Shown: positions 53,071 through 54,616 of the stretch, piece after piece
How positions within the stretch are numbered: the first letter of the stretch is position 1
Layout: each line of letters starts with the position of its first letter
NCBI RefSeq assembly: GCF_000143415.4
Contig: NW_003314261.1
Location: 1,626,117 to 1,690,116, forward strand
DNA: 64,000 nt
Direction of reading: 5' to 3'
Origin: Selaginella moellendorffii
Lineage: Eukaryota > Plantae > Lycopodiophyta
Notes under the pieces: generated by a model
The model's database searches: none
Told to the model about the DNA's origin: nothing
What the model saw: the letters and a program-made list of their open reading frames with translations, nothing else
Translations under genes and position numbers: made by a program

Positions 53071-54616
53071 ATGATTCTCGACACAGCCGATGATTCTTAC
53101 TCGCTCCAAGCTGTTGTCGACGGCGCCTCGTCCTCGTACAATCACTCTCCTCCTCCTCTTCCTCCCAGCGGCTTCATCCACCTTTCTCCTGTTGTTTGCG
53201 TGCTCGAGCCATGCGCTGCTTGTTCTTGCGCTTGCTGCTGCCAGTGTCCATGGTGTTGGACTGAAAAAGCCGCTCCTTTCCAGGTCCAGTGGGTTCTCGA
53301 GCAGCAACAATGCGAGGAGCTCGATTGTAGCGAGCTCTTTCTCCTCAGCCAGTGCGCTGCTGCTGCTGCTGCTGCTATGGAGAACTTCACGGATTCCTCG
53401 CCACCACCTATTGACGCTGCTGCGGAAGACGAGCGTGCTGCCTTCTTCTACAGCTTCACGGACGGCTGCCTGGCTTCGATGGACGACGCCATCGTCGCAG
53501 ACGAATGCTGGAACAGCCTGCTCGATCCCAGAGTCTTGCTGGAAGATGAAAAGCAGCAGTGGGGAAAAGTTGCTGCCTCGACACCACCAGTGAATGTCCG
53601 AGCCCAAGAAACCAAGTTTCAGTGCGGCGATGGAAATTGTCAAGAACATGCCCGCCAGGAAAACGCCAGGTACGAAGAGAAGCGCTGCTCTCTTTTCATG
53701 ATCCGATCTTCGGTGCCTGTTCTTCCAGGATCCGGGAGTTCCGAGCAGCGTTTAAGCGGGCTCTCCGGGACAACTTGGTCATCGACGTTGATGCTGCCAC
53801 GGACGTCAAGGTAAGTGAAGAAGCCACCTTCCTTTCAAGAACTTGGAGGAAAAAGAAAAATCTCTCACCGGGTTTCTTAGAGATCTTCTCCAGTGCGAAG
53901 TTGTGGATGACGACGACGACTTCACACTTCCGGGGCTCCGGGAATATCACCCAACCATGGATCCACTCCAGAGGAGTCCAGAAGTAGCCGGAGGAGTGGA
54001 GTCTAGGAACAAGAGAGTTCGCAAGACCCAGTCGGATGATAGCTTCCTCGTGGACGCGCTTCGGCGTAAAAAGGCAAGAACCAAGCTCGACTTCCACATC
54101 CCCGAGGCCGATGTCTACGCGATGCATCCGGCTTTGCTCCTGCGAAATTCTCCAGGTGAGTCACTGGAGAGCTGACAGAGAAGAAAATTCTCTCCATCCT
54201 GTCGTTCCTCTCTACTCTACTAGAATTCTACCACGGATGTGTTCGTCTTTGTAGCTGGAACGCGATATTTCTTCTCGAGGACGAAATATTACTTCTGCCG
54301 GCCGGCGCGATCGAGGACGACGCTGGAGGGATGGCGATGGAAGCAGCAAGGGCCGTCGCTGCCGATCAAGATGAATGGGGAAGTGGTGGCCTACAAGACG
54401 TACCTCAGCTTCGTGCCGCTCAAGAACAACGCCTCGTGGCTGGAAATGCTGCTAGAGGCGGCAGAAGGGAGGAGGTCGAGAAGGTGGGCGCGCTACACGA
54501 TGGAGGAGATTGTGCTCAAGGAAGACCGAGCGATAGAGCTACAAATGCTCAAGGCCTGCCTCATCCCGCGTCCATTCCGTGTGCTGTGTCGAATCTCTAG
54601 CCGACAAGATCCCTAA
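53071..54616 (+). CDS. Atypical protein with a divergent C-terminal NAC-like domain (exons 53071-53669, 53729-53810, 53894-54155, 54255-54616)
   Basis: Exons join in frame via GT-AG introns. C-terminal blocks LPGLREYHPT / SDDSFLVDALRRKK / IPEADVYAMHP / RYFFS / WRWKQQG..PI..GEVVAYKTYLSF / YTMEEIVL / VLCRI follow NAC subdomain order. True start could be 53377. Confidence 0.75.

What the first reader, a model, noticed from the sequence alone, without database searches (positions are those of the whole stretch)
53071..54616. Back-to-front, highly divergent NAC-like protein beside a retrotransposon
Seen: a clean 4-exon ORF whose last ~200 aa reproduce NAC subdomains A-E in order. LPGLREYHPT ~ PPGFRFHPT, then a ~25-aa insert before SDDSFLVDALRRKK ~ TDEELV.YLRRK; EADVYAMHP ~ EVDLYK.EP; RYFFS ~ WYFFS; WRWKQQG ~ FWKATG; VVAYKTYLSF ~ LVGMKKTLVF; YTMEEIVL ~ WIMHEYRL; VLCRI. 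A phase-1 intron falls between subdomains B and C, as in the canonical NAC at 9631. Known: NAC domains are normally N-terminal with a C-terminal regulatory region, and the WKATG strand inserts into the DNA major groove. Inference: the acidic region here is N-terminal and the recognition strand is altered, so this may be a lineage-specific NAC class with different specificity, a dominant-negative dimer partner or a decoy.
Basis: partly seen in the sequence, partly recalled or inferred. Interest (0 to 1): 0.78.

Follow-up and report, generated by a model that had tools for sequence, protein, structure and literature searches.

The report
Divergent conserved NAC gene, domain last
This Selaginella gene really does encode a strongly diverged NAC-type DNA-binding domain at the tail end of the protein, but it belongs to a small old plant family (Marchantia calls its copy MpNAC10) that databases already label as NAC and nobody seems to have studied.

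Summary
The four GT-AG exons (53071-53669, 53729-53810, 53894-54155, 54255-54616, + strand) match the last four exons of Selaginella moellendorffii SELMODRAFT_402258 (474 aa). UniRef already names it "NAC domain-containing protein".

Evidence for a NAC domain at the C-terminus:
- Full-length protein passes Pfam NAM: 39.2 bits against a cutoff of 27, residues 315-412.
- AlphaFold2 folds residues 313-472 confidently.
- Every strong PDB match is a NAC domain (Foldseek E 1e-8; VIA Z 11.6-13.5, next fold 4.2).

It is not lineage-specific. Relatives occur in liverworts (MpNAC10, Calypogeia), another lycophyte, ferns and Taxus. None was found in angiosperms or mosses.

The family keeps an invariant R-W-K-Q-Q-G strand where canonical NACs have WKATG. 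The base-reading Lys and an upstream Arg are kept; the base-reading Thr is always Gln. The PGFRFHPT dimer strand is not recognisable in the relatives. Selaginella keeps a relic (PGLREYHPT) 25 residues upstream, in a stretch predicted disordered.

"Back-to-front" applies to Selaginella and the ferns. The liverworts, Diphasiastrum and Taxus keep a C-terminal tail.

Most likely reading: a working DNA-binding factor with shifted specificity. Function is inferred, not shown. The scan probably noted the allelic copy before (s1-341579).

The parts
52541..52651 (+). Annotated extra 5' exon of SELMODRAFT_402258 (37 codons). Whether it is coding is unverified.
   Evidence: P0001 begins here and splices 52651/52652 (GT) to 53061/53062 (AG). 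There is no orthologous support. One nonsynonymous difference from the allelic copy.
53062..53669 (+). It encodes an N-terminal region that is Cys-rich, then acidic and Ala-rich, and predicted mostly disordered.
   Evidence: Open frame and GT donor at 53670. No Pfam hit. pLDDT mostly under 50. Other frames here are also open, so coding status rests on the splice frame and the annotation.
53729..53810 (+). Exon of 27 full codons, predicted as a helix.
   Evidence: AG at 53727-28 and GT at 53811-12, frame confirmed. Present in P0001. Helix 230-255 with pLDDT 66-72.
53894..54155 (+). Exon with the acidic run, the PGLREYHPT relic, a basic insert (KRVRK) and NAC helix 1 plus subdomain B.
   Evidence: AG at 53892-93 and GT at 54156-57; phase-1 intron follows. 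Pfam NAM begins at residue 315.
53930..53956 (+). PGLREYHPT (residues 280-288): probable relic of the NAC subdomain-A strand PGFRFHPT, displaced 25 residues from helix 1.
   Evidence: Local alignment score 33 against the window's own canonical NAC motif; 14 of 20000 shuffles reach it. pLDDT under 50. Not recognisable in relatives. E284D in the allelic copy.
54029..54155 (+). NAC-like domain, first part (residues 313-355): helix 1 and the ADVYxxHP segment.
   Evidence: AF2 helix 313-327 with pLDDT 73-92. HMMER alignment to SNAC1 and ANAC019. Pfam.
54255..54616 (+). Last exon: NAC-like domain, second part (residues 356-472), through the final VLCRI strand, then the stop.
   Evidence: Pfam NAM on this exon alone E 2e-4. 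AF2 strands 357-363, 381-385, 390-394, 397-409, 435-442 and 463-470. Structural matches reach residue 472.
54335..54352 (+). Recognition strand R-W-K-Q-Q-G (residues 382-387), in place of canonical Y-W-K-A-T-G.
   Evidence: R382, W383, Q385, Q386 and G387 are invariant and K384 nearly so across 11 family members. It aligns to WKATG of ANAC019 and SNAC1.
54827..55611 (-). Ty3/gypsy-type RT and RNase H fragments, about 200 bp beyond the stop codon. A neighbour, not part of the gene.
   Evidence: Pfam RVT_1 63.8 bits and RT_RNaseH 59.9 bits. GC falls from 0.49 to 0.38.

Best explanation
This is an intact gene of Selaginella moellendorffii (SELMODRAFT_402258), one copy on each assembled haplotype. 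It encodes a deeply diverged member of the NAC transcription-factor superfamily. It belongs to a small family that includes Marchantia MpNAC10 and was also found in Calypogeia, Diphasiastrum, Psilotum, Adiantum and Taxus.

Shown: the protein ends in a complete NAC beta-sheet core (residues 313-472). A long, poorly conserved and mostly disordered region precedes it.

Inferred: the domain still binds DNA through the edge strand of the sheet. The positions that read bases or hold the backbone in ORE1/ANAC019 are the ones kept invariant here. These are R373 (equivalent to ORE1 Arg91) and K384 (equivalent to Lys102), plus extra invariant arginines R375 and R382. The third base-reading residue (Thr104) is an invariant Gln386, and the Ala beside it is an invariant Gln385. 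The preferred core sequence should therefore differ from the canonical NAC site.

Also inferred: the canonical N-terminal dimerisation strand has decayed, so pairing with ordinary NACs through that interface is unlikely. The protein probably binds alone or through another interface. The regulatory part sits N-terminal to the domain.
For: Gene model and identity.

NAC membership:
- Pfam NAM 39.2 bits against cutoff 27; relatives score 19-44 bits.
- The family profile hits only NAC chains in the PDB.
- AF2 pLDDT 83-97 over residues 313-472 outside the 410-430 insert.
- Foldseek's top 13 are all NAC, E about 1e-8.
- VIA Z 11.6-13.5, with the next fold at 4.2.
- Shared phase-1 intron.

Selection:
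- 16 invariant columns across plants from liverworts to a gymnosperm, clustered in the Arg loop, the recognition strand, KTYLS and MxE.
- Both haplotype copies are intact and all five indels lie outside exons.
- Coding differences 13 of 1407 against non-coding 28 of 1187.

Residue equivalences come from the ungapped HMMER alignment to SNAC1/ANAC019. Contact roles come from the ORE1-DNA structure paper (PMC10203392).

Loss of the dimer strand: Pfam starts at model position 10, and AF2 predicts no strand before helix 1 in either the Selaginella or the Diphasiastrum protein.

Architecture: the Psilotum relative, from a EukProt record with a transcript-style name (c15792_g2_i1), has a 420-residue N-terminal region and ends just after the domain.
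Against: - No expression or binding data could be examined for the Selaginella gene.
- The N-terminal 270 residues have no homologue, low model confidence and open alternative frames. The real start could lie further downstream.
- Between haplotypes, 8 of 13 coding changes alter the protein (rough dN/dS about 0.5). That is too few to show constraint, and one (P461A) hits a nearly invariant position.
- The His141 backbone contact of ORE1 is Glu or Ile here.
- The loop carrying Arg129 and Lys135 is replaced by a variable insert. DNA binding could therefore be weakened rather than retuned.
Confidence: 0.68

Rival explanations
1. It is a non-DNA-binding decoy or dominant-negative partner. The remodelled NAC core titrates canonical NACs or their cofactors instead of binding DNA.
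For: The recognition strand has changed (A to Q, T to Q). The His141 equivalent is acidic. The Arg129/Lys135 loop is replaced by a variable insert (PMC10203392).
Against: The element canonical NACs use to dimerise is the least conserved part. The invariant residues are basic and polar surface positions at the DNA-contact strand and loop, which is hard to explain without nucleic-acid binding.
Confidence: 0.14
2. The long N-terminal region is an artefact of the gene model. The real product starts at an internal Met (for example M289, just after the HPT relic) and is essentially a stand-alone NAC core, so the 'back-to-front' layout in Selaginella is not real.
For: Exon 1 has no homologue and low pLDDT. 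Long open frames exist in two other frames. Haplotype changes in exon 1 are 4 nonsynonymous to 2 synonymous. The extra 5' exon in the annotation has no support.
Against: All splice sites are in frame and canonical. No indel falls in an exon between haplotypes, while three of the five lie in the introns or upstream of the gene and two just downstream. Fern relatives have even longer N-terminal regions with a terminal domain. Every full-length relative has residues ahead of the domain; the 236-aa Taxus model, which may be cut short, has almost none.
Confidence: 0.13
3. It is a decaying NAC pseudogene or a fragment carried by a transposon, sitting beside a retrotransposon.
For: Retrotransposon fragments start about 200 bp after the stop. 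Similarity to canonical NACs is low.
Against: The frame is intact in both haplotypes. Orthologues exist in distant plant lineages with invariant motifs. The fold is predicted confidently. There is no second copy in the window. Fern proteins end at the same point, so the transposon did not truncate the gene.
Confidence: 0.04

Closest known systems
Canonical NAC transcription factors (Pfam PF02365 NAM; structures ANAC019 1UT7/3SWP, ORE1 7XP3, SNAC1 3ULX)
   Same: The beta-sheet core and flanking helices are the same (Z 11.6-13.5). Subdomains B to E come in the same order. The Arg of the minor-groove loop and the W, K and G of the recognition strand are kept. The phase-1 intron between B and C is shared with the canonical NAC in this same window.
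   Different: The domain is C-terminal or central, not N-terminal. The PGFRFHPT strand is decayed. WKATG is replaced by an invariant RWKQQG. MHEY is replaced by M-E/I-E-I. There is a variable insert between the KTYLSY and TMEEI strands. The second canonical intron is absent. Pfam scores are only 19-44 bits, against 62 + 98 bits for the two exon ORFs of the canonical NAC at 9454.
Marchantia polymorpha MpNAC10 (BBN08792.1, MARPO_0070s0029) and its relatives in Calypogeia, Diphasiastrum, Taxus, Psilotum and Adiantum
   Same: Same family. E-values run from 1e-23 to 2e-4 with exon 4 alone. The invariant motifs are shared.
   Different: The Marchantia, Calypogeia, Diphasiastrum and Taxus proteins keep a C-terminal tail. 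In the last three it holds a shared amphipathic motif. Selaginella and the ferns end 4-6 residues after the last strand. Only Selaginella keeps a recognisable PGxRxxHPT relic. No paper on MpNAC10 was found. Two NAC surveys count nine Marchantia NACs (PMC12085091, PMC7147800).
VOZ (vascular plant one-zinc-finger) proteins, once placed in NAC subgroup VIII-2
   Same: A NAC-like region lies C-terminal to other sequence. They were historically grouped with NACs (PMC6204039).
   Different: No conserved zinc-finger pattern precedes the domain here. VOZ is reported absent from Marchantia and Selaginella (PMC6204039), where this family is present. No hit of the exhaustive search carries a VOZ name, while a canonical three-domain NAC did appear. 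A direct comparison with a VOZ sequence could not be run.
WRKY and GCM DNA-binding domains
   Same: They share the way of inserting a beta-strand edge into the major groove (PMC10203392). WRKY is the next-best structural match.
   Different: Only Z 3.6-4.2 over about 70 residues. There is no zinc site.

Membership tests
NAC (NAM/ATAF/CUC) superfamily | Match to Pfam PF02365 above the gathering score | tested here: met
   P0001 scores 39.2 bits, E 1.1e-9, cutoff 27. Exon 4 alone scores 22.2 bits.
NAC (NAM/ATAF/CUC) superfamily | NAC fold: twisted antiparallel beta-sheet packed against helices | tested here: met
   AF2 pLDDT 83-97 over 313-472 apart from the 410-430 insert. Foldseek's top 13 are all NAC, E 1e-8. 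VIA Z 11.6-13.5. This is a predicted model, not an experimental structure.
NAC (NAM/ATAF/CUC) superfamily | Subdomains A-E in order, with PGFRFHPT at the start of A | tested here: inconclusive
   B to E align. The second half of A (helix 1) is present. The PGFRFHPT part is only a displaced relic in Selaginella and is not recognisable in the relatives.
NAC (NAM/ATAF/CUC) superfamily | Conserved WKATG(T/K)D recognition strand | tested here: not met
   The family has an invariant RWKQQG. W, K and G are kept, while A and T are both Gln. It is a variant of the motif, not the motif.
NAC (NAM/ATAF/CUC) superfamily | NAC domain at the N-terminus with a C-terminal regulatory region | tested here: not met
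   The domain spans residues 313-472 of 474. It is central in the liverwort and Diphasiastrum relatives.
NAC (NAM/ATAF/CUC) superfamily | Dimerisation through the N-terminal strand and salt bridge | not testable with these tools
   Only single-chain prediction was available. No strand is predicted ahead of helix 1.
NAC (NAM/ATAF/CUC) superfamily | Sequence-specific DNA binding | not testable with these tools
   Inferred from conserved contact residues only (PMC10203392).
MpNAC10-type family (RWKQQG NACs) | Shared motifs: YF..TKY, R.R.T..G.RWKQQG, KTYLSY, M.EI.L.ED and P.PF.V.C at the end | tested here: met
   All are present in P0001. There are 16 invariant columns over 11 members.
VOZ | Conserved one-zinc-finger domain B ahead of the NAC-like region | tested here: inconclusive
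   No conserved Cys/His pattern precedes the domain in the alignment. No VOZ sequence was available for a direct comparison.

The most novel reading that the evidence does not exclude
The RWKQQG proteins are an old, separate branch of the NAC superfamily. On this reading they arose at or before the base of land plants and were lost in angiosperms, and perhaps in mosses. They read a different DNA core with a Gln-Gln recognition strand and bind without the canonical NAC dimer. They have been left out of the NAC surveys read here, which count nine NACs in Marchantia.
Probability: 0.3. Interest if true: 0.55.

Novelty: new variant of a known kind. Interest (0 to 1): 0.4.

Why it matters
[quoted passage not shown] Their DNA reading is attributed to a nearly universal WKATG strand and an N-terminal dimer. 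This family keeps the fold but fixes a different recognition strand and drops the dimer strand, and it has done so across several hundred million years of land-plant history. That makes it a natural test of which residues set NAC specificity.

A single-copy orthologue exists in Marchantia, where knock-outs are routine. The family's function, and its apparent absence from flowering plants, could therefore be tested directly.

The gene itself is already annotated as a NAC-domain protein. The gain is in characterising the family, not in finding a new kind of protein.

Tried and rejected
1. Pfam on each exon separately: only exon 4 gave a hit, and it was below threshold. BLASTP of exon 3 against the canonical NAC's first exon found nothing.
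2. A profile search with the full-length alignment A1 was wasted. Its search words came from the low-complexity N-terminal regions, and it returned only two known members.
3. No paralogue in the window. No C-terminal tail motif of the relatives lies downstream of the stop.
4. Idea that the retrotransposon truncated the gene: rejected. Fern proteins end at the same point and both haplotypes share the arrangement.
5. Idea that the 25-residue insert is an unspliced intron: rejected. The only GT...AG pair in it spans 48 nt and would not restore canonical spacing (read).
6. A second AF2 run on the Diphasiastrum relative, to see whether an upstream hydrophobic motif docks as strand 1: no strand, pLDDT under 50.
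7. Literature searches for MpNAC10, SELMODRAFT_402258, Mapoly0070s0029 and WKQQG: no papers. The supplements of two NAC surveys did not list the gene or were not held.
8. VOZ kinship could not be tested directly, because no VOZ sequence was available by reference.
9. dN/dS between haplotypes: only 13 coding differences, uninformative.
Exons were searched one by one by reference. The database protein P0001, returned by the search tool, stood in for the full-length product.

Full report
**What is in the sequence.**
Reading 52600-55100 and checking frames gives four + strand exons: 53071-53669, 53729-53810, 53894-54155 and 54255-54616. All have GT-AG borders. The intron phases are 2, 0 and 1. My first guess for the exon 2 frame was wrong and was corrected. 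The exon 3 acceptor that keeps the frame is the AG at 53892-93.

Each was searched by reference. Pfam gave nothing for exons 1-3. For exon 4 it gave a sub-threshold NAM hit: E 2e-4, 22.2 bits against a cutoff of 27, model positions 56-106.

**Identity.**
An exhaustive phmmer search of exon 4 against 1.84 billion representatives found only ten proteins at E 0.001 or better. The first, P0001 (474 aa, 100% identical), is Selaginella moellendorffii SELMODRAFT_402258 (EFJ37720.1). UniRef names it "NAC domain-containing protein". The annotation adds a 5' exon (52541-52651) plus three codons.

A second entry, SELMODRAFT_408611 (P0020), is the copy on the other assembled haplotype and differs at 8 residues. 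I used P0001, a database protein returned by the tool, wherever a full-length product was needed.

**Is it a NAC domain?**
Yes.
- Full-length P0001 passes Pfam NAM: 39.2 bits, E 1.1e-9, residues 315-412 against model positions 10-109.
- phmmer against PDB sequences lists only SNAC1 and ANAC019, weakly.
- A profile of the family lists only NAC chains, E about 6e-4.
- AlphaFold2 with an 11-sequence family alignment gives pLDDT 83-97 for residues 313-472. The exception is the 410-430 insert, at 56-61. The topology is helix, strands, helix, strand.
- Foldseek's top 13 PDB matches are all NAC domains, E about 1e-8, prob 1.00.
- VIA-align gives Z 11.6-13.5 for NAC entries, with the next fold (WRKY) at 4.2.

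The phase-1 intron between subdomains B and C matches the canonical, VND-like NAC at 9454-10039 in this same window. That gene's first intron is also phase 1, at 9631/9632, and it scores 62 + 98 bits on NAM. An intron falls at the same place in a relative from an unidentified plant (L001). The second canonical intron is absent.

**Subdomain A.**
Pfam starts at model position 10, so PGFRFHPT is not aligned. Aligned to the window's own canonical motif it scores 33, and only 14 of 20000 shuffles of the 312 upstream residues reach that score.

It lies 25 residues before helix 1, in a stretch with pLDDT under 50 and no predicted strand. No comparable match exists in any relative outside Selaginella. 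A second model, of the Diphasiastrum relative, also shows no strand ahead of helix 1. I read it as a relic of the strand, not a working dimer element. The VIA alignments that start at residues 277-288 leave a little room for doubt.

**The family.**

| Organism | Protein | Length (aa) |
|---|---|---|
| Diphasiastrum complanatum | P0002 | 325 |
| Marchantia polymorpha (named MpNAC10 in GenBank) | P0011 | 343 |
| Calypogeia fissa | P0019 | 385 |
| Taxus chinensis | P0005 | 236 |
| Psilotum nudum (transcript-style record name) | P0016 | 578 |
| Adiantum nelumboides | P0009 | 708 |
| Fern-like contigs | P0017 / P0008 | 230 / 98 |
| Unidentified plant, SRR33208241 | P0003 | 285 |

No angiosperm, moss or alga member appeared. 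The only other plant hit was a canonical three-domain NAC of Acer, whose score sums three weak domain matches.

Sixteen columns are invariant across eleven members: T377, G380, R382, W383, Q385, Q386, G387, T403, Y404, S406, M437, E439, L442, D445, E449 and P459. R373, R375 and K384 are nearly invariant.

The domain is terminal in Selaginella and the ferns. The Marchantia, Calypogeia, Diphasiastrum and Taxus proteins keep a tail of about 40-115 residues. In the last three the tail shares a short amphipathic motif. "Back-to-front" therefore reflects an N-terminal extension in all full-length members, plus loss of the tail in some of them. It is not an inversion.

**How it probably works.**
The ungapped HMMER alignment to SNAC1/ANAC019 equates:
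- R373 with ANAC019 Arg85 (ORE1 Arg91);
- K384 with Lys96 (ORE1 Lys102);
- Q386 with Thr98 (ORE1 Thr104).

In the ORE1-DNA structure these three residues make the base-specific contacts, and Arg94 is among the residues that hold the phosphate backbone (PMC10203392). Here two of the three base readers are kept. The third is an invariant Gln, and the neighbouring Ala is also an invariant Gln. Invariant arginines sit at 375 and 382.

The His141 contact is Glu or Ile. The loop with Arg129 and Lys135 is replaced by a variable insert that ends in a basic cluster.

The pattern is invariance exactly at the DNA-facing strand and loop, with change at one reading position. It fits a DNA-binding domain with shifted specificity better than a decoy. 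Because the dimer strand has decayed, pairing with ordinary NACs through that surface seems unlikely. All of this is inference; nothing was measured.

**Is the gene alive?**
Both haplotype copies are intact. All five indels between them lie outside exons. Coding divergence (13 of 1407) is lower than non-coding divergence (28 of 1187). Of the 13 coding changes, 8 alter the protein, which is too few for a dN/dS test.

Deep conservation is the real evidence for constraint on the domain. The N-terminal 270 residues are a weak point. They have no homologue and low model confidence, and other frames in the region are open. The fern relatives, however, show the same layout.

**Context.**
The stop codon is followed within about 200 bp by AT-rich sequence. 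That sequence carries Ty3/gypsy RT and RNase H fragments on the minus strand. Fern proteins end at the same point, so the element did not truncate the gene. Upstream lies a Core-2/I-branching glycosyltransferase gene.

**What is known.**
No paper was found for MpNAC10, the locus tags or the WKQQG motif. Two NAC surveys count nine NACs in Marchantia and 20-22 in Selaginella, and neither mentions such a clade (PMC12085091, PMC7147800).

VOZ proteins, once grouped with NACs, are reported absent from Marchantia and Selaginella (PMC6204039). I could not compare a VOZ sequence directly. No hit of the exhaustive search carries a VOZ name, and no conserved zinc-finger pattern precedes the domain.

The scan's own notes list an "Inverted-architecture NAC gene" of 1545 letters on another piece of this genome (s1-341579). 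This is probably the allelic copy. They also list a zinc-finger plus divergent NAC-like gene elsewhere (s1-423104), which I did not examine.

**Verdict.**
This is an already-annotated but uncharacterised variant NAC family, of moderate interest.

Noticed in passing
window 9454-10726 (+): A canonical three-exon NAC gene of VND/VNS type (…EPWDLQ / [33 protein letters not shown]…). It scores Pfam NAM 62 + 98 bits on its first two exons. The first intron is phase 1 at 9631/9632.
   Followed up: partly
window 54827-55611 (-): Ty3/gypsy RT and RNase H fragments. The element appears cut off on its integrase side, about 200 bp from the NAC gene's stop. The same arrangement is present in the other haplotype.
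   Followed up: partly
window 47290-48780 (-): ORFs of a Core-2/I-branching (GT14) glycosyltransferase gene: Pfam Branch, 106 and 24 bits.
   Followed up: partly
window 49366-49860: A long low-complexity AT/AC-rich repeat that reads as (YI)n in several frames. GC falls to about 0.25 around 50000-52000.
   Followed up: no
L001:2164-3260 (-): In the unidentified plant (SRR33208241), a second and much more divergent copy of the same family lies convergently about 900 bp downstream of the first. Its motif is RRWMQRG instead of RWKQQG. BLASTP gives E 1e-5 to the first copy, and there is no Pfam hit.
   Followed up: partly
P0002 about 300-325, P0019 about 360-385, P0005 about 215-236: The Diphasiastrum, Calypogeia and Taxus relatives share a short C-terminal amphipathic motif, predicted as a helix in P0002 (304-314, pLDDT about 55). 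Selaginella and the ferns lack it. It may be an activation or interaction motif.
   Followed up: no
P0016 about 98-140, P0009 about 170-215: The two fern relatives share N-terminal motifs: L-E-L-S/N-I-G (EAR-like LxLxL) and RSGFSKWQRP. This hints at a repression motif in the N-terminal region.
   Followed up: no
window 53200-53260 (residues 84-103 of P0001): A Cys-rich run in the N-terminal region (nine Cys in 20 residues). It is kept in both haplotypes, absent from relatives, and has no Pfam match.
   Followed up: no
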